From positions 1 to 64,000 of the IMG/VR virus record IMGVR_UViG_2162886007_000107: a DNA stretch of 64,000 nt; one strand, given 5' to 3'. The notes beneath the pieces are model-generated. The model was not told the origin of the DNA and did not search any database. It was given only the letters and a program-made list of their open reading frames with translations. A program made the position numbers and the translations under genes. This document shows, in pieces, positions 12,284 through 64,000 of this stretch. The number at the start of each line of letters is the position of its first letter. Position 1 is the first letter of the stretch.

Positions 12284-12295
12284 ACCTATATTACT
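12284..12295 (+). promoter_or_regulatory. phiKZ-type early promoter
   Basis: ACCTATATTACT; same motif at 35978, 40237 and 58199. Confidence 0.6.
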
Positions 12296-40236: not shown

Positions 40237-40253
40237 TTCAGACCTATATTACT
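40237..40253 (+). promoter_or_regulatory. phiKZ-type early promoter
   Basis: TTCAGACCTATATTACT directly after a terminator hairpin (~40173-40207). Confidence 0.75.
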
Positions 40254-46556: not shown

Positions 46557-47447
46557 ATGCTTATTAACGCCTACGACACGACCGTAGGGAAACCTTTTAA
46601 GGTAACCGACCAGGTTGAGGCCACAATTAAGGCCTTGCACATTGCTCGAACCTTGGTCCCCACCAAGAAAGAGGGTGTGTTTTGTATCGACTACAGCGCT
46701 GAAGTGTCAGTGAAGATTTTCGCCTTTCCGATTACTCTGCGTGCGTACAACAACAAGAACATTACTGTTCATGATGAACGTCCTTATCGCAACAAGAGTA
46801 ATAATCAGGTAGTCAACAGTAACGAGCTGACTGCTTTGCGTTTGGCTTCCTTTTTACAGCATGATGTGGCAGAAGGAGATCCTGGTCCTCTGAAAAAAAT
46901 GCGAGCTGTTGCTTGCAAGGGTTTCTCTGAGTCGATCAGTAACCGTATTTCCAAGCCTGCTGGTCTGAACGCTAACGAATCGATGACCTTGAAGATCTTG
47001 CTGGGTCATTACTTTGTTTCGTTGATTGAGCCACAAGGTAATGACGTTGAGCTGGTAACCACCAACGTTATGCGTGAAGTCTACGGTGCAGATAAAGGCT
47101 TTGTACTTGGTATCATTGACGATATTCAAGACATCGGCCATTTGCACAACCTTGAACAGTTGCTTCAGGCTATCAACAGAAACCCAACGCTGTACAAGTT
47201 GAAGGGTTACGAGCTGAAAGATTTGATTGCGGCTTATTCAGGTATTACCTTTGCTGCTTTGGGTAGTAAGGTAATTGGTGCTGCTTGTGAGGCTCCTTGT
47301 CTCTTCTCAGCTCTTACCTACGTGGCTGCTAAATTCACCAGTTCCTATTCCAGGACAAAACTGGGTGAAGCCCTGGATATCAAATACAACAAAGAACTGT
47401 TGAAGAACTTTACCCTCAACGTCGAATGTACCTATGATCTTTGGTGA
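46557..47447 (+). CDS. Conserved protein (phiKZ gp28 position)
   Basis: 296 aa; synteny. Confidence 0.7.
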   Translation: MLINAYDTTVGKPFKVTDQVEATIKALHIARTLVPTKKEGVFCIDYSAEVSVKIFAFPITLRAYNNKNITVHDERPYRNKSNNQVVNSNELTALRLASFLQHDVAEGDPGPLKKMRAVACKGFSESISNRISKPAGLNANESMTLKILLGHYFVSLIEPQGNDVELVTTNVMREVYGADKGFVLGIIDDIQDIGHLHNLEQLLQAINRNPTLYKLKGYELKDLIAAYSGITFAALGSKVIGAACEAPCLFSALTYVAAKFTSSYSRTKLGEALDIKYNKELLKNFTLNVECTYDLW

Positions 47448-47452
47448 TACCT

Positions 47453-50119
47453 ATGAACGAAAGGAGCCCGGTAGACGACACACCATTGGTGCGTCACGCC
47501 GAAAGTCGCCTCTGGGCTAACCCGGAGGAGAATGGTCAGTACCAAGTAAAAATGGTGCGCATTACTCCAGATGAAGGGGTAGTGGTGAACTTCGGTTACA
47601 TGGGGAAGTGGCGGTCATTACCTCGTGAAAAACGTACCTTCCACATCTTTACCGTAGCAGGCTTGGTTCCGGGGTATTGGAACTTCCGTAACAACGTCCT
47701 GTTGCGTAACCCGTTGGACCGTTGGGTCAATGCGGGTCGCTTGTGTAAGACTCGTGGTGTAATGCTGGATCTCTACGACGAGAAGGGTTTCCAGTATCCT
47801 CGCAGCTATGCTTGGATCATGCACACTTACGACGGCCTTACACTGATTGCTTTTGAGAAGTTCCCACAATACCCTATCCCTTCCAAGAAGGCGATGTGGT
47901 TCCGCTGCTACACCCCAAGTAGCCCAGTGGATAAGTGGGAGAACTCCACTCCAGATCGTAACCCCTACGAATACGAGTGTATGCGTTACTCCCGTCCTGA
48001 TGAAATGCAGACCTTCATGGCCATGTACAACAGGATGAAGAGCAAGCCAGGCTACACAGGGGTGTTCCATAACGGTGCTTTCTTTAAGGGTGCTCCGAAC
48101 GCTATCCCTGACCTGAAGTCGAATGACCTGGTAGAGATCTGGCACGATCCAACCGTACTGCGTGTTGAAACCTACGCTTACAGCAGCATGTTCGACTTCT
48201 ACTCGGAGTTGGATAAGAAGCGCAAGGTTATCGTGCATCCGCCGAAACGTAAGGGTGATTTCACTCTGCGTTACTTCGATGACAACGATTACTTCATGAC
48301 CGCCCGTAACAACCGAGGCTTGATGCTTCCTCGTTACGACGTTACTGCTGTACGGCAGTTAACTCATGCTGACGTTGCGATTGCGGATGAGTTTGTCCAG
48401 AACGCTGCTACTTACCACCCTGACCTGGCCAAGGTGGAGAATATCCAGATTACTGTGTTGGTTCGGAAGAGTAGTTGGCAGTTTGATTGGCCTCAAGAGC
48501 ATCAGCGTTTCCGTTACCTTTATCGGTTGCCGGATGCGGATATCTTGCGAGCCATGACAGGTCCTCGGGCTCTTGTCCCTGAGTGGGAAGCCAAGACCTT
48601 GGAGGCGGGAGCAGTCAGTTCCTTCACTCGTCTTCAGTGGAACAAGATCAATCGTGAGAACTCTGCTTTGGCGGAAGGTTACAACGCGGCTACGCGTGTG
48701 CTGGCTGAAACTCCATTGCCTGCAACTTATGCTCCTGGTACCTTGGGGATTGATGTTCCTTACAGTTACCGTGAAAGCTACACAGCTTGGGAGTATGACG
48801 ACAAGGGTCATTTGATTGGTTACTACAACGCCTACAACCGCTCTAAGTACAGCCCGGTCAATCCGGAATGCGTGATGGTTGAATTCGTAGTAGGTGAAGC
48901 GGGTCGTGAGTTCGATATCACAATCACCAACGTTACCACCAAGGTAGATCCTAATTGGGACCTGCGAGTTTACACGGTGGGTTGGAGCATTGTTACCAAC
49001 ACCACGGTAGGTGATTGGATAGACGTTACGGATGACAAGACTGTCTACGATATCGAAGACGGGAACGTGGTGTGGAAAGGTTTGGACACGGTTAACAAAC
49101 GCGGCATCCTTGTTACCAACAAGAAGAGCATCGCGTATACCTTCCAGCTTGAACACATTGACCACAGTCTCTCGTTTGCTCTGACAGACATTTACGTTGG
49201 CGGTGGACATCTCTTCCCATACAGCCCAGCCGAGTTCGATCTGTGGATGAACAAACATCCCCTGATTGAGAACGTTGACTGGTTGTGGAGAGACGGTCGT
49301 ATCTACGTCCACAACAAGGAGTTCATCGTAGATGGCCCGCAAGAGTTCACTGTACGAGCGCATTCTTTCTACGATAATCTGGTTAGACCTAACTCTGACA
49401 CCGAGCTTGGGTTCGTGGACGGTGGGTGTATTGGTCGCACTGATCGTTATAACCTCCGCGGCGATCGAGTTACTCGTACGGTTATTAATGGGGCGTTGTA
49501 TTTCAGTGATTCTGTTCCTCGCACTGAGCGGCTCGTACCCGCAGACCAATGGGCCGAGCTTAATGGTCGTCCCTATTGCGTCAAGCACATCTACGCTCCC
49601 ATCAAAAGCGTGGTGGACTACAAGCACTTCCCATTGAGGGCTCGTAGTCGGGAAACGGATCAGAACGTTAGCGATTACCTTACTGAATATCTGCCTAAGC
49701 CTCGTACTCTTGCTGAAGAGATTCATTACGAGAAAGGGGATAGTCCTGGTCCAATCGGGACGAAGGCAGCCATTACCAACATCCAGGATAAATACCGTCT
49801 GTTCAGTCCGTTCATGAATGCCGTGACAAACGCCATTCTGAATAAGCTGCTGACAGTACCTGAGTTCGGGGATGGGGAAACCACGTTCAGTGAGCAGCAA
49901 GTCCGTGATCTGGTTAAGCAGTACATCTGGTGGTTGGAGTTTGATCCACTCATCCTGAACTATGATCTGCGGTTCTTTGCGGTAATGCCTTACGCAAACT
50001 TCGAGATGGTTGAAGTAACAGCTCCGGAATTTGTTTTCCTGAAGATTGTGAACCGACTGTTCCTTAAATCCGCCTGTCACATTGAAGGGCATTATGGAGT
50101 AACCAAGTATGGCAGGTAA
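47453..50119 (+). CDS. Virion structural (baseplate-region) protein (phiKZ gp27 position)
   Basis: ~890 aa; synteny. Confidence 0.7.
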   Translation: MNERSPVDDTPLVRHAESRLWANPEENGQYQVKMVRITPDEGVVVNFGYMGKWRSLPREKRTFHIFTVAGLVPGYWNFRNNVLLRNPLDRWVNAGRLCKTRGVMLDLYDEKGFQYPRSYAWIMHTYDGLTLIAFEKFPQYPIPSKKAMWFRCYTPSSPVDKWENSTPDRNPYEYECMRYSRPDEMQTFMAMYNRMKSKPGYTGVFHNGAFFKGAPNAIPDLKSNDLVEIWHDPTVLRVETYAYSSMFDFYSELDKKRKVIVHPPKRKGDFTLRYFDDNDYFMTARNNRGLMLPRYDVTAVRQLTHADVAIADEFVQNAATYHPDLAKVENIQITVLVRKSSWQFDWPQEHQRFRYLYRLPDADILRAMTGPRALVPEWEAKTLEAGAVSSFTRLQWNKINRENSALAEGYNAATRVLAETPLPATYAPGTLGIDVPYSYRESYTAWEYDDKGHLIGYYNAYNRSKYSPVNPECVMVEFVVGEAGREFDITITNVTTKVDPNWDLRVYTVGWSIVTNTTVGDWIDVTDDKTVYDIEDGNVVWKGLDTVNKRGILVTNKKSIAYTFQLEHIDHSLSFALTDIYVGGGHLFPYSPAEFDLWMNKHPLIENVDWLWRDGRIYVHNKEFIVDGPQEFTVRAHSFYDNLVRPNSDTELGFVDGGCIGRTDRYNLRGDRVTRTVINGALYFSDSVPRTERLVPADQWAELNGRPYCVKHIYAPIKSVVDYKHFPLRARSRETDQNVSDYLTEYLPKPRTLAEEIHYEKGDSPGPIGTKAAITNIQDKYRLFSPFMNAVTNAILNKLLTVPEFGDGETTFSEQQVRDLVKQYIWWLEFDPLILNYDLRFFAVMPYANFEMVEVTAPEFVFLKIVNRLFLKSACHIEGHYGVTKYGR

Positions 50120-60742: not shown

Positions 60743-62155
60743 ATGTCCGTACATGTAAAGATGCTCGACAAAGATGGTGTAGGCTTCCGCTTCGTAACTG
60801 TGGAAGACCCAGTTTGTATTCAACTGATTCCAACCGATCCAGATATCGGCGGTTATCCAGTTCTGCGTATTGGCCGCACTCCAGCACCAATCATCAACTA
60901 CCCACTCACCAATGACGCCTATGTCATGAACGATGCGGGCGAAACCATTTCCAAGGTGTCCCTGAAGGAATGCCTGCGGGAAGTTGGTAAAGAACAATTC
61001 CGTCCTGACCGTAAAGGTTTGGCCGAACTCCCACCGTTTGAAGAACAACATCGGAAAGTCATCTCCGATAGTCTTCGTATGGGCTCCCTTTCCGTAAACA
61101 TTAAGACCGACGACCCTGTTGGCCTGGTTAAAGAAATGCGTGAAGCATTCAACGGGACGGACAAGAATCCAAATGGTAACCGCCCGCGTCAAATCCAACT
61201 TGATCCTAGCTTCAGACGCATCGAAGCTAGTGAAGAAAAGTGGTGGGTGTACAACGGTGATAAGCTCATAGACGTCCTCATGCTCGGTGCAAGAGACCTT
61301 GCAACGCTCAATGCATGCGTCTCTCCAAATGACCGTGTTGCATTTGACGAGTACCTAATCCTTAACTGGTCGGGTAAGGCTGAAACCCTTCAAGGATTTC
61401 AGAAAGAGATTGCCCGTAATAACAAACTCTACGATGCCTACATGTTGGTAGCGGGTACTACCGTTTGTACAGCCACATCTTTTACTCCATTGATGCCTGA
61501 TCCAGAATTGGGTGCTCATTTGTACGCCTTAATCAATGGGCAGAAAGTCCACGTTTCTGCCCTGACTATGGGCGACGTCATAATCAACAATGTGTTCTAT
61601 CTGAACCCGTTGTCGGTTGATCCAACAGTTGTTGATTGTGATCCAGAAATCATGACGTACATGTTGGCTGCATCTACCGTGTATTTCCATGCTCGTCCAG
61701 AAGAACGTACCGATGAAACAGGGATCAAAGGCTGGATTGATTACGCTTTCCATGATTCCAAGTACAACGTAACCTTGCCAAAGAGTGCGGTCGGTGAAGA
61801 AATCGACTCTACTATTGAAGCTGCTTCTACAGGGCTTTGGAAGAACGCCATCTTATCTTTGACCCAATACACCAAAAATCTTCTTGGCAACCCGGCTCTT
61901 TCTGACAAGATCCAGTTGTTACAGATTCGGGTTACAAAAGGTAGCGTGCAAAGTTTCAGAACCTTCATTACCAGAAATGGTGTGGCGGTCCGTATGTTCT
62001 GGGAAGATAGGGAAGACGCGGTAACTGACGAAGCAATCGAATTAATCAAGAAAGCTTTCGATAACCCTCGCAATTACTTCTGGTTTAACGTTTACCTGGA
62101 TGTAAAGGAAGGTTACGATAGTGATCTGATTGTCAAAGAAGTAAAAAGCAACTGA
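60743..62155 (+). CDS. Hypothetical protein, family member 4
   Basis: 470 aa with AGGA RBS; AYVMNDAGETI motif. Confidence 0.75.
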   Translation: MSVHVKMLDKDGVGFRFVTVEDPVCIQLIPTDPDIGGYPVLRIGRTPAPIINYPLTNDAYVMNDAGETISKVSLKECLREVGKEQFRPDRKGLAELPPFEEQHRKVISDSLRMGSLSVNIKTDDPVGLVKEMREAFNGTDKNPNGNRPRQIQLDPSFRRIEASEEKWWVYNGDKLIDVLMLGARDLATLNACVSPNDRVAFDEYLILNWSGKAETLQGFQKEIARNNKLYDAYMLVAGTTVCTATSFTPLMPDPELGAHLYALINGQKVHVSALTMGDVIINNVFYLNPLSVDPTVVDCDPEIMTYMLAASTVYFHARPEERTDETGIKGWIDYAFHDSKYNVTLPKSAVGEEIDSTIEAASTGLWKNAILSLTQYTKNLLGNPALSDKIQLLQIRVTKGSVQSFRTFITRNGVAVRMFWEDREDAVTDEAIELIKKAFDNPRNYFWFNVYLDVKEGYDSDLIVKEVKSN

Positions 62156-62174
62156 CAGTTGTTATGTTATACAA

Positions 62175-62755
62175 GAGGTGTGCTTTCTGAACCTCTAACC
62201 CAATTCCCCGAGAGGGAATCTTTGGTCCCTTAAGGGTGGAGCCGAAGTACGTAAGGGGATATGCTATTTCGTGACTGCTTGTGTATATCCGAACCCTATG
62301 GTGGTATGTCAAAGCCACAAGTCACAACTGTTTCTATTACATGCCCGCTGGACTGGGAGCCGTTGGCCGATAGGCGAATGCGGCAAAGCACGGTCTGGTA
62401 GGATTCTGAGATAGTTGAGGCGAACCTTTACGCCTGGGGGTGATTCTAGAAAATCCCCGGGGGTCTAGGTCTTGCCCGGATGGTTCCGGGTTTTCCGGGG
62501 GAGGGGACGGCAAAGGACGTTCTTTTCCCCGGCGCTATTTAAAGGTAACGTTTATGACGGGACCTAACGAATCCGTGTAAGAGACGGTATCTGGATAAAC
62601 CTAATGTTGCGGTCTTCTCTTTAGTCTGAATAAGACGGTCAGAGTTGTGCTAGATGTTAGGATGAAAAGCCTCATGACAGAGGGCGATTCAGACTAAGCG
62701 TATTCAGTACGTCTTAGAGAGCAGGGCGTCAATCCTGTGATCTGTCCCGATTTCC
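62175..62755 (+). ncRNA. Candidate large structured ncRNA (or several adjacent ncRNAs)
   Basis: No plus-strand ORF of 60 aa or more; many helices and a potential pseudoknot; flanked by two TATGTTATAC motifs. Confidence 0.45.
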
Positions 62756-62778
62756 TATGTTATACGAAAAAGTGTTTT

Positions 62779-62866
62779 GGAGAGATTCCCGAGTGGCCAA
62801 AGGGATCAGACTGTAAATCTGACGTGCGATCGCACTTCGTAGGTTCGAATCCTTCTCTCTCCACCA
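62779..62866 (+). tRNA. trnY: tRNA-Tyr(GTA)
   Basis: Cloverleaf with TCAGA-ctGTAaa-TCTGA, long variable arm, TTCGAAT, encoded CCA. Confidence 0.95.
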
Positions 62867-63018
62867 TGTTTATTCATAAGCCAAGTATCCAACAAGCGTA
62901 AGCCTGGATGCAGGGAACCACAAAGCCAACGCGCTGCCAGTGATTGGTTAGGCAAGCAGAAAGTAACATTACAGCCGATGGTACGGTGAAATCTACTTGA
63001 CTTATGAATAGCTTTATT

Positions 63019-63095
63019 GCGGCCATAGTTCAGCTGGTTAGAATACCCGCCTGTCACGCGGGTGGTCAGGGGTTCGAGTCCCCTTGGTCGCGCCA
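63019..63095 (+). tRNA. trnD: tRNA-Asp(GTC)
   Basis: CCCGC-ctGTCac-GCGGG, TTCGAGT, encoded CCA. Confidence 0.95.
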
Positions 63096-63511
63096 AACGT
63101 GTAGCTCTTGGCCCTGTGGGTCTCCTTGGTTGGTGTGGTGTTGTTACGCCAAGAGCTACACCCTATATTCGACGCCCCGCTACCCCGCGCCCTCGCCCGA
63201 AGAAAACACTTCCTGATTGTGGTGAGTCAGGTTCTGAGCATTTAATGCAGTGTAGTAAGAGTCTATATCGCCACGCATATTCCTTCTTCAGGTTTCATCT
63301 AGGTTTCCTGGAGAGAATCTTTGCCATTGTCCCCTGGTCCGGGCTGACGTTAACCGTGTCTATGGCAGAGTAAAGTTGTCCTGGCAAATAAGCCGGATAG
63401 AGCAAACGGTAGTTTCGTATTAAAAGTTGAAAGCAGCCTGGGATGCAGTTTGAGGTGGGTCCCCTATCGACAAGGCTAGGTTTAAAGCACTTACACTGAT
63501 CCGATTTATTA

Positions 63512-63587
63512 GGCCTAGTAGCTCAACTGGCAGAGCATCGGTCTCCAAAACCGAAGGTTCCAGGTTCGACTCCTGGCTACGCCGCCA
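63512..63587 (+). tRNA. trnW: tRNA-Trp(CCA)
   Basis: TCGGT-ctCCAaa-ACCGA, TTCGACT, encoded CCA; one C:C mismatch in the acceptor stem. Confidence 0.92.
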
Positions 63588-63731
63588 AATTCCCTTACCA
63601 GATCCATTGATCAAGGACAACCTGGTAAGGTAAGAAAACACGTAGGAGCGTGCGACGGTCTACCTCCCTTGACTTAGGTCATGAGCAACGTGCGGTATAA
63701 GTCCGAAGACACGTCAAGATTTTTGTTACAT

Positions 63732-63807
63732 TCCGTGTTAGCTCAGTTGGTAGAGCAAACGACTGTTAATCGTTTGGTCCCTGGTTCGAGTCCAGGACAC
63801 GGAGCCA
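63732..63807 (+). tRNA. trnN: tRNA-Asn(GTT)
   Basis: AACGA-ctGTTaa-TCGTT, TTCGAGT, encoded CCA. Confidence 0.95.
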
Positions 63808-64000
63808 ATTCTTTAAACCTGTGCGTAATCACCCGAGATGCACCGCCCTCACAGGTTTTCATAGCTACATTCAAAATTGTCAGTCCGATCGTTGAGGTGG
63901 TCTAAACTGATAAGGCAACGCATCGTATCCGAAGGCATGTTAACTCTAGGGACCTTACCCCTACGTTAACCGCAGCCAAACCCGCCTGAGCGTTAGAAGG

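What the first reader, a model, noticed from the sequence alone, without database searches (positions are those of the whole stretch)
62163..62765. ~600-nt candidate large ncRNA upstream of the tRNA cluster
Seen: no credible ORF; identical TATGTTATAC motifs at 62163 and 62756 (the second precedes tRNA-Tyr); dense helices with G-U pairs. An 11-bp helix (62621-31 with 62687-97) is crossed by AAGACG 62632-37 with CGTCTT 62710-15, forming a pseudoknot, all enclosed by CGGGAC 62558-63 with GTCCCG 62744-49. Known: large ncRNAs such as GOLLD and ROOL occur beside phage tRNA clusters. Inference: a novel structured RNA or ribozyme; I could not match it to a named family.
Basis: partly seen in the sequence, partly recalled or inferred. 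Interest (0 to 1): 0.72.

Follow-up and report, generated by a model that had tools for sequence, protein, structure and literature searches.

The report
New structured RNAs heading phage tRNA cluster
The stretch in front of this giant phage's tRNA genes encodes two conserved, folded non-coding RNAs that match no catalogued family; one also occurs in the cultured Pseudomonas phage EL, so its unknown function can be tested at the bench.

Summary
The window is the first 64 kb of a 236-kb jumbo phage related to Pseudomonas phage EL. The flagged region (62156-62778) has no conserved ORF. It folds far better than shuffles on the + strand only (z -5.2 against -0.3). It has no Rfam 15 match.

Homologues exist in seven other distinct sequences, about six lineages in all, from soil and rhizosphere jumbo-phage contigs. 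They show two separable modules rather than one 600-nt RNA.
- **Module A** is about 370 nt (62170-62541). It is present in all lineages and, diverged, in phage EL. It ends in a hairpin followed by a U-rich tract.
- **Module B** is about 170 nt (62587-62754). It is present in four lineages. A tRNA-Leu separates it from A in some genomes, and it abuts a tRNA directly in another.

Both modules show compensatory base changes well above shuffled and slid controls.

Its 11-bp helix, pseudoknot and enclosing helix occur only in this genome and conflict with the conserved fold.

TATGTTATAC is a signal specific to this locus. It is probably a start site of the phiKZ TATG type.

Verdict: a real, new family of phage non-coding RNAs, similar in genomic context to GOLLD and ROOL. 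Function and transcription remain untested.

The parts
62163..62172 (+). TATGTTATAC box, copy 1, at the 5' edge of module A. It is a candidate transcription start signal: it begins with TATG, the phiKZ late-promoter core in which G is +1.
   Evidence: The exact 10-mer occurs only twice in the genome. In relatives the exact copy occurs only at this island, and 1-mismatch copies are at background level. Other lineages and EL carry ATTATATAC at the same place. The phiKZ TATG rule comes from PMC4666361. The function is inferred.
62170..62541 (+). Module A, a structured RNA of about 370 nt. Its helices are:
- H1: 62176-81 with 62191-96
- H2: 62205-09 with 62213-17
- H3: 62221-29 with 62238-46, with the invariant loop CCUUAAGGGUGG
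- H4: 62257-69 with 62278-90
- H5: 62300-04 with 62314-18
- H6: 62321-34 with 62408-21, enclosing a variable insert
- H7: 62424-44 with 62449-70
   Evidence: Eight distinct homologues were found. RNAalifold gives 64 pairs, 36 of them with compensatory changes. With ribosum scoring there are 90 pairs, and 41 carry double changes against 21 +/- 3 in shuffles (0 of 500 reach it); slid controls give 14-18. On the alignment fitted to the covariance model, 13 of 29 pairs carry double changes against 7.7 +/- 1.6. Folding z = -3.1.
62495..62541 (+). Terminator-like end of module A: a 15-bp hairpin (62495-62509 with 62518-62532) followed by CGCUAUUUA.
   Evidence: Every lineage ends module A with a stable hairpin followed by a U-rich tract (UUAACUUUUUAC and similar). 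In EL it is an 11-bp G+C-rich stem followed by a run of eight U. The U-tract is weak in this genome.
62546..62586 (+). Linker between the modules, with a small hairpin (CCGU/ACGG, about 62573-62588) and a TATG at 62552-62555.
   Evidence: G003 has a covarying hairpin (CCAUGG/CCAUGG) here. In G002, M062 and L110 a complete tRNA-Leu occupies this position.
62587..62754 (+). Module B, a structured RNA of about 170 nt. Its helices are:
- P1: 62590-96 with 62687-93
- P2: 62600-20 with 62641-61
- P3: 62624-26 with 62634-36
- P4: 62669-73 with 62680-85
- a variable hairpin: 62698-703 with 62708-13
- a hairpin: 62723-26 with 62734-37
- an invariant unpaired tail, GUCCCGAUUUC: 62744-54
   Evidence: Covariance model R1 finds exactly one copy each in G000, the G002 group, G003 and L104, and none elsewhere. 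Of its 40 pairs, 92.4% of cells are paired. Twelve pairs carry double changes against 4.1 +/- 1.6 in shuffles (0 of 500 reach it); slid controls give 1-6.
62756..62765 (+). TATGTTATAC box, copy 2, lying 13 nt upstream of tRNA-Tyr. It is a candidate start signal for the tRNA operon.
   Evidence: The same box follows module B in G003 and the G002 group. It is absent in L104, where module B abuts tRNA-Leu directly.
62779..62866 (+). tRNA-Tyr (GTA), the first of six tRNAs. Four lie in the window and two more follow, up to genome position 64248.
   Evidence: ARAGORN and Rfam.

Best explanation
The region holds two genes for folded, non-coding phage RNAs at the head of the tRNA island of an EL-like (phiKZ-type) jumbo phage.

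**Module A** (about 370 nt) is most likely its own transcription unit. It would start at or just after the TATGTTATAC box (ATTATATAC in other lineages). It folds into at least seven covarying helices around invariant single-stranded blocks. It ends at a hairpin followed by a U-rich tract.

**Module B** (about 170 nt) is part of the tRNA precursor. It would be released by ordinary tRNA processing: RNase P cutting at the 5' end of the tRNA that follows it, and 3' trimming of the tRNA that precedes it in some genomes.

Both are then proposed to act in trans as stable folded RNAs during infection, like the GOLLD and ROOL RNAs that accompany phage tRNA islands.

**Shown here:** conservation, strand-specific structure, covariation, absence of coding potential, modularity, terminator-like ends, and a homologue in phage EL.

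**Inferred:** transcription, the start sites, the processing route, and action in trans.

**Unknown:** the molecular target.
For: - **No known family.** No Rfam match even at E <= 10 for the window, and none for the homologues.
- **Strand-specific folding.** z = -5.16 on the + strand against -0.30 on the - strand.
- **Homologues.** They occur in about six lineages at 48-72% identity, always at the head of a tRNA cluster in jumbo-phage contigs of 230-244 kb.
- **Covariation above controls.** Seen for module A and for module B.
- **No conserved ORF**.
- **Modularity.** tRNA-Leu lies between A and B in three sequences, B abuts tRNA-Leu in L104, and G001 has A alone.
- **EL homologue.** Model R2 hits a 323-nt unannotated gap at 106633-106779. 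It shares five ordered invariant blocks with the family. In EL the element ends in a classic terminator.
- **Constraint within Elvirus.** 16 of 23 variable columns fall in the 30% of columns that are unpaired.
- **Autonomy.** The genes flanking the EL copy have no homologue in this genome, so the RNA is conserved independently of its neighbours.
- **RNA libraries.** In RNA-seq run X4, contigs 97-99% identical cover the RNA at word depth 12-18, against 2-8 for the flanking genes.
Against: - Transcription is not shown. The RNA-library contigs could come from contaminating DNA, and the depth excess is only about two-fold.
- The terminator U-tract is weak in this genome.
- The promoter role of TATGTTATAC rests on analogy with phiKZ. 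The genome's clear promoter-like motif is different: TTTAACTT, about 17 nt, then CCTATATTAC, in 12 copies.
- Only eight distinct sequences are available. They are phylogenetically related and three are close, so the covariation statistics are modest.
- No function or partner is identified.
- The invariant tail of module B is unexplained, except that it resembles the GAUUUCU leaders of other tRNAs.
Confidence: 0.55

Rival explanations
1. Module A is a cis-acting leader or attenuator, like a riboswitch or T-box. It would sense a signal and set read-through of its terminator into the downstream tRNAs (or into gp102 in EL).
For: Module A always lies upstream of the next unit and in the same orientation. 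It ends in a terminator-like hairpin. G- and C-rich stretches upstream could form alternatives to the terminator stem; this was seen by eye only, in G001 and G000. The RNA sits beside tRNA genes and has an invariant GGUGG-containing loop.
Against: - The downstream unit differs between lineages: tRNA-Asp, tRNA-Leu, module B, or an unrelated protein gene in EL.
- A TATG-containing box follows the terminator in most lineages, which suggests that transcription re-initiates there.
- There is no match to T-box or any riboswitch model.
- No conserved antiterminator pairing was demonstrated.
Confidence: 0.2
2. It is one continuous ncRNA of about 600 nt (62163-62765), closed by CGGGAC/GUCCCG, with the 11-bp helix and the pseudoknot. 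It might be a ribozyme.
For: All the stated complementarities exist in this genome. Modules A and B are adjacent here and in G003. The whole stretch folds with z = -5.2.
Against: - A and B are separated by a tRNA in three sequences.
- B is missing in G001 and EL.
- The three named pairings are absent from the relatives and compete with covarying helices.
- A terminator-like hairpin lies between A and B.
Confidence: 0.08
3. The RNA has no function of its own. The conservation would reflect DNA-level signals (promoters, terminators, protein operators) and processing spacers of a tRNA operon.
For: The boundary boxes, the hairpins with U-tracts and the GAUUUCU leaders are plausible DNA or processing signals. 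Another spacer, upstream of tRNA-Asn, is also conserved.
Against: About 540 nt with dozens of compensatory pair changes, invariant loops and strand-specific stability is far more than such signals need. The EL copy is not part of a tRNA operon.
Confidence: 0.12
4. The region encodes small peptides.
For: ORFs of 46-47 codons exist on the + strand at 62261-62414.
Against: No ORF is conserved between lineages. Insertions and deletions are not in multiples of three, and the variable inserts differ in length.
Confidence: 0.02

Closest known systems
GOLLD RNA (Rfam family; large ornate RNA of phages and prophages)
   Same: It is a large structured non-coding RNA encoded by phages next to tRNA islands. 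It has a two-part architecture with a linker that sometimes holds tRNAs (bioRxiv 10.1101/2024.12.08.627333). Here a tRNA-Leu lies between modules A and B in three sequences.
   Different: There is no match to the covariance model at E <= 10. The total size is smaller (about 540 nt against about 800). Here the 5' module is the universally conserved part, whereas in GOLLD it is the 3' region. The hosts are Gram-negative-type jumbo phages. Oligomerisation was not tested.
ROOL RNA (Rfam RF03087, accession from memory)
   Same: It is a structured RNA of about 580 nt from phages and prophages, often near tRNA islands, with unknown function and no known protein partner.
   Different: There is no model match. 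The secondary structure is different. The present element splits into two separable modules, and module A has its own terminator.
sRNAs of phiKZ-like phages found by ONT-cappable-seq (for example 201phi2-1 sRNAs, one directly upstream of a tRNA)
   Same: They are non-coding transcripts of nucleus-forming jumbo phages, one lying immediately upstream of a tRNA. In 201phi2-1 the Leu-tRNA is transcribed from a phage middle promoter (PMC11512511).
   Different: Those are short sRNAs derived from 5' UTRs and defined by transcript ends, not by conserved structure. No sequence relation was tested or is evident.
T-box and other riboswitch leaders
   Same: They are long structured leaders that end in a terminator hairpin and are functionally tied to tRNA.
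   Different: There is no Rfam match. The element is not upstream of aminoacyl-tRNA synthetase or related genes. The downstream unit varies, and no antiterminator was shown.

Membership tests
GOLLD RNA | Match to the Rfam covariance model (conserved 3' domain) | tested here: not met
   cmscan with permissive filters found no GOLLD hit at E <= 10 in 61900-64000. There was none in the homologues at the gathering threshold or at E <= 5.
GOLLD RNA | Phage or prophage location beside a tRNA island, with tRNA sometimes inside the linker | tested here: met
   The region lies directly upstream of six tRNAs. tRNA-Leu lies between the modules in G002, M062 and L110. Context alone does not establish membership.
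ROOL RNA | Match to the Rfam covariance model | tested here: not met
   No hit.
GOLLD/ROOL-like nanocage RNAs | Homo-oligomeric assembly | not testable with these tools
   Complex prediction requires a protein chain. SEC-MALS or cryo-EM is needed.
tRNA / tmRNA / RNase P RNA / group I and II introns / known small ribozymes | Model match (ARAGORN, Rfam) | tested here: not met
   ARAGORN finds nothing within 62156-62778. Rfam finds only the flanking tRNAs.
Stand-alone sRNA gene with an intrinsic terminator | Stable hairpin followed by a U-tract at the 3' end | tested here: met
   The feature is present in all lineages and is classic in EL. It is weak in this genome (hairpin 62495-62532, then CGCUAUUUA) and was not called by the simple scanner.
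phiKZ-type nvRNAP late promoter | TATG with the G as the transcription start | tested here: inconclusive
   Both boxes begin with TATG, and the rule comes from PMC4666361. However, four lineages and EL have ATTATATAC instead, TATG alone is not sufficient even in phiKZ, and no 5'-end data exist.
T-box / riboswitch leader | Model match and a conserved class of regulated genes | tested here: not met
   There is no Rfam hit. The downstream units differ between lineages.

The most novel reading that the evidence does not exclude
Module A, with or without module B, is a new class of ornate, trans-acting RNA of nucleus-forming jumbo phages. It would have its own biochemical activity, for example binding or handling tRNAs, assembling into an RNA-only particle like GOLLD or ROOL, or catalysis. 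It would be directly testable in the cultured pair phage EL and P. aeruginosa.
Probability: 0.25. Interest if true: 0.85.

Novelty: new variant of a known kind. Interest (0 to 1): 0.6.

Why it matters
Large structured RNAs beside phage tRNA islands (GOLLD, ROOL) are among the least understood bacterial and phage RNAs. Their known hosts have made function hard to study.

This family is unrelated to them in sequence and structure but shares the same context and the same tRNA-in-linker arrangement. It belongs to the phiKZ/EL group of jumbo phages. One module is present in phage EL, which grows on P. aeruginosa. That gives a tractable system for asking what such RNAs do.

The work also corrects the likely start of EL gp102. 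It shows that the tRNA islands of these phages carry several conserved non-tRNA RNA modules.

Tried and rejected
- **Direct searches of cultured phages.** blastn of the region and tblastn of the upstream 470-aa protein against cultured phages found nothing. PHROGs and Pfam gave nothing for the neighbouring proteins except DUF7193.
- **Single-protein locus searches.** They found no relatives. An alignment of DUF7193 proteins was needed.
- **A wasted scan.** One viral-contig scan used a miscounted gap.
- **Searches in relatives.** Models R1, R2 and R3 found no further copies in 31 other EL-like contigs, nor in RisingSun or FishSpeaker. blastn with the EL copy found only one chance 16-mer.
- **Bacterial genomes.** None of the 120 loci checked carries the family's other signatures.
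The enclosing helix, 11-bp helix and pseudoknot were rejected as family features.
- **Alternative closing helix for module B.** AUCUGGAU with GUCCCGAU was rejected because the L104 change breaks it, while the same change compensates in the P1 model.
- **TATGTTATAC as a genome-wide promoter.** Rejected, because the box is specific to this locus.
- **boxA-like reading of CUCCUUAAC.** Considered from memory only and dropped in favour of a terminator U-tract.
- **Structure prediction.** Complex prediction could not take RNA-only input.
- **Read data.** Read laying gave only weak expression evidence, and its single call was used on the window. The RNA runs that hold the EL copy could therefore not be inspected.

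Full report
**Setting**

The window is the first 64 kb of a 236,430-bp IMG/VR virus record. Its 892-aa DUF7193 protein (47441-50116) is 53% identical to that of Pseudomonas phage EL and 47% identical to those of Erwinia phages RisingSun and Joad. The record is therefore an EL-like, phiKZ-type jumbo phage.

The flagged stretch lies between the stop of a 470-aa ORF (60743-62155) and tRNA-Tyr (62779-62866). That tRNA is the first of six on the + strand, which run to genome position 64248.

**Checking the observation**

- TATGTTATAC occurs exactly twice in the whole genome, both times here.
- In relatives the exact 10-mer is again found only at this island, and one-mismatch copies are at background frequency.
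- The region folds much better than dinucleotide shuffles on the + strand (z = -5.16) but not on the - strand (z = -0.30). This fits a + strand RNA with G-U pairs.
- No Rfam 15 family matches inside the region, even at E <= 10.
- No ORF is conserved between homologues.

**Relatives**

Direct blastn against cultured phages found nothing. An alignment of DUF7193 proteins recovered 38 related viral contigs.

blastn of the region hit six of them, in patches. Pattern scans of the viral and metagenome collections added more.

After removing identical copies there are eight distinct sequences in about six lineages, at 48-72% pairwise identity. They are G000 (with an identical metagenome copy, L107), G003, M092, G001, G002, M062, L110 and L104. 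All come from contigs that carry a tRNA cluster immediately downstream, and where the contig is long it measures 230-244 kb.

Of 31 other related contigs searched for tRNAs, seven have any. Four of those seven (G024, G026, G029, G034) have two tRNAs each and no copy of this RNA.

**Two modules, not one RNA**

The alignments show two separable modules.
- Module A is about 350-390 nt. It is present in all eight sequences.
- Module B is about 170 nt. It is present in G000, G003, the G002 group and L104.
- Module B is absent from G001. In M092 something different takes its place.
- In G002, M062 and L110 a complete tRNA-Leu lies between A and B. There, B starts right after the tRNA's CCA end.
- In L104, B ends at GUCCCGAUUUCU and tRNA-Leu begins at the next base.

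**Structure and covariation**

| Module | Method | Pairs | Pairs with compensatory (both-side) changes | Shuffled control | Slid control |
|---|---|---|---|---|---|
| A, whole | RNAalifold on MAFFT alignment | 64 | 36 | – | – |
| A, whole | RNAalifold, ribosum scoring | 90 (88.7% of cells paired) | 41 | 21 +/- 3 (0 of 500 reach it) | 14-18 |
| A, first 160 nt | alignment fitted to model R2 | 29 | 13 | 7.7 +/- 1.6 (0 of 500 reach it) | 0-5 |
| B | alignment fitted to model R1 | 40 (92.4% of cells paired) | 12 | 4.1 +/- 1.6 (0 of 500 reach it) | 1-6 |

Helix coordinates in the window are listed under 'parts'.

Invariant single-stranded blocks sit between the helices. They are CCUUAAGGGUGG, UGAC, AACCUAUG, AGUCAC and UGAGGCGG in module A, and GGAUAAACC, GAAAAGCC, GGGCGAU and GUCCCGAUUUC in module B.

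There are caveats. The sequences are few and related. The structures were derived from the same alignments that were scored. The shuffle test is not a probability.

The 11-bp helix, the AAGACG/CGTCTT pseudoknot and the CGGGAC/GUCCCG closure exist only in this genome.
- In the family, AUUCAGA (62687-93) pairs with UCUGGAU (62590-96). In L104 an A-U pair becomes U-A there, which supports this pairing.
- GUC and GAC (62624-26 with 62634-36) form a small hairpin that covaries with GCC/GGC in relatives.
- 62698-62713 is a local hairpin whose sequence differs in every lineage.
- An 11-bp stem or longer arises in 3 of 100 shuffles.

**A homologue in phage EL**

Model R2 gave one weak full-length hit in EL, at 106633-106779 on the + strand (17.4 bits). 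It lies in a 323-nt gap with no annotation, between gp101 and gp102.

The EL sequence carries five blocks in the same order as the family. They are ATTATATAC, AACUUAAGGGUGA, CCGAACCCUAUGG, AAGUCAC and GUGAGGCGGCUUGU. Its hairpins are equivalent, with 13 pairs changed on both sides relative to the family majority.

The EL element ends in an 11-bp G+C-rich stem followed by UUUUAUUUUUUUU. This overlaps the annotated start of gp102. Two other Elvirus records start that gene about 130 nt further downstream, so the EL start is probably misannotated.

Ten Elvirus records hold the element at 95.6-100% identity. Of 23 variable columns, 16 fall in the 30% of columns predicted to be unpaired, and the paired ones keep pairing.

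The EL copy is 3.6 kb from EL's single tRNA. Its flanking genes have no homologue in this genome. Module A is therefore conserved as an autonomous unit.

A model rebuilt with EL found no further copies in 31 relatives.

**Ends and signals**

In every lineage module A ends with a stable hairpin followed by a U-rich tract. The tract is UUAACUUUUUAC or similar, and in this genome the hairpin is 62495-62532 followed by CGCUAUUUA. That is how an intrinsic terminator looks. The simple scanner did not call it.

After it, most lineages have a near-palindromic element, UUGUUAU-CAUAU-GUAACA, which contains TATG. Its stem covaries.

phiKZ late promoters are defined by TATG with the G as +1. phiKZ middle promoters have AAanTTACc centred near -24 (PMC4666361). 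In 201phi2-1 a middle promoter drives the Leu-tRNA (PMC11512511).

By my reading of the alignment, most lineages have TTAC about 19-22 nt upstream of the G of TATG. G003 places it about 3 nt closer, and this genome has no TTAC there.

I therefore read the TATGTTATAC boxes as locus-specific start signals for module A and for the tRNAs. This is inference. The genome's obvious promoter-like motif is a different one: TTTAACTT, about 17 nt, then CCTATATTAC, in 12 copies, all on the + strand.

The invariant tail of module B resembles the GAUUUCU leaders that precede several other tRNAs in these islands.

**Expression**

Public runs hold the sequence.
- In RNA-seq run X4, contigs 97-99% identical to the phage cover modules A and B at word depth 12-18. 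Pieces of the flanking genes have depth 2-8.
- Run X3, of unknown library type, has 100% identical contigs at depth 24 in the RNA and 6-11 elsewhere.

This is weak, because DNA carry-over cannot be excluded. RNA libraries that hold the EL copy exist but could not be inspected.

**Comparison with known RNAs**

GOLLD and ROOL are large ornate RNAs of phages and prophages that lie near tRNA islands. GOLLD has a conserved 3' region, a variable 5' region, and a linker that sometimes contains tRNAs.

The present RNAs share that context and the tRNA-in-linker arrangement. They fail the model tests for both families, and here the 5' module is the conserved one. They also match no tRNA, tmRNA, RNase P, intron, riboswitch or ribozyme model. 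A literature search found no description of such an RNA in EL-like phages.

**Verdict**

This is a real, conserved, structured non-coding locus and a new RNA family: one autonomous module and one embedded in the tRNA operon. The mechanism beyond expression and processing is unknown. A cis-acting attenuator role for module A is the main rival.

Noticed in passing
window 12287-12294 and 40245-40252 (also 12199); further copies in the genome at 64607, 70618, 137318, 175643, 198526, 202956, 215064, 218869, 233303: A strongly conserved promoter-like motif: TTTAACTT, about 17 nt, then CCTATATTAC. There are 12 copies, all on the + strand, and 11 are intergenic. It resembles the TATATTAC early-promoter box that I recall for phiKZ.
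   Followed up: partly
window 63588-63731: The spacer of about 140 nt between tRNA-Trp and tRNA-Asn is conserved in all lineages. Its invariant blocks are CAUUGAUCAAGG, AAAGAAAGCAC and GUGCGGUAAAAGUCCGAA, and it has small covarying hairpins. It may be a third non-tRNA RNA module of the island.
   Followed up: partly
window 63099-63169: Right after tRNA-Asp there is a long perfect hairpin (GUGUAGCUCUUGG ... CCAAGAGCUACAC). It is followed by CCTATATTCG, which resembles the phage promoter box and was called as a sigma-70-like site. The rest of the 416-nt spacer folds no better than shuffles (z = 0.27).
   Followed up: partly
L058 (G002), L062, L092 (M092) and L057 (G001): downstream of the second TATGTTATAC box or of tRNA-Asp: A class-II tRNA-like gene (AGAGAGTTGTCCGAGTGGTT ... 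GGGTTCGAATCC ... ACTCTCT) appears to be interrupted by an insert of about 30 nt or more near the anticodon arm. ARAGORN misses it, or calls part of it a 92-nt tRNA-Gly(ccc). Rfam gives a weak tRNA-Sec-like hit in G003.
   Followed up: no
genome 64079-64248 (just past the window; L133:79-245): The last two tRNAs are called tRNA-Ile(AAT) and tRNA-Gly(ACC). Anticodons with A34 are unusual in bacteria, and the tRNA-Ile call is 85 nt long.
   Followed up: no
L118:1136-1264 (phage EL, 106935-107063): The annotated first 43 or so codons of EL gp102 overlap the terminator hairpin and U-tract of the RNA. The true start is probably the ATG at L118 1265, as annotated in phages HHBS8_1 and MIZ-Pa99.
   Followed up: yes
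after the last tRNA in several lineages (G000 genome about 64250-64275; L057, L058, L110): A conserved element, ACAUGGUCUAGCGGCCGUGU, follows the final tRNA of the island in at least four lineages.
   Followed up: no
window 64000 boundary; genome 64682-65677 (+): A protein of about 331 aa downstream of the tRNA island is conserved in all relatives that have tRNAs, including the distant G024 and G026 group. A long antisense ORF overlaps it.
   Followed up: no
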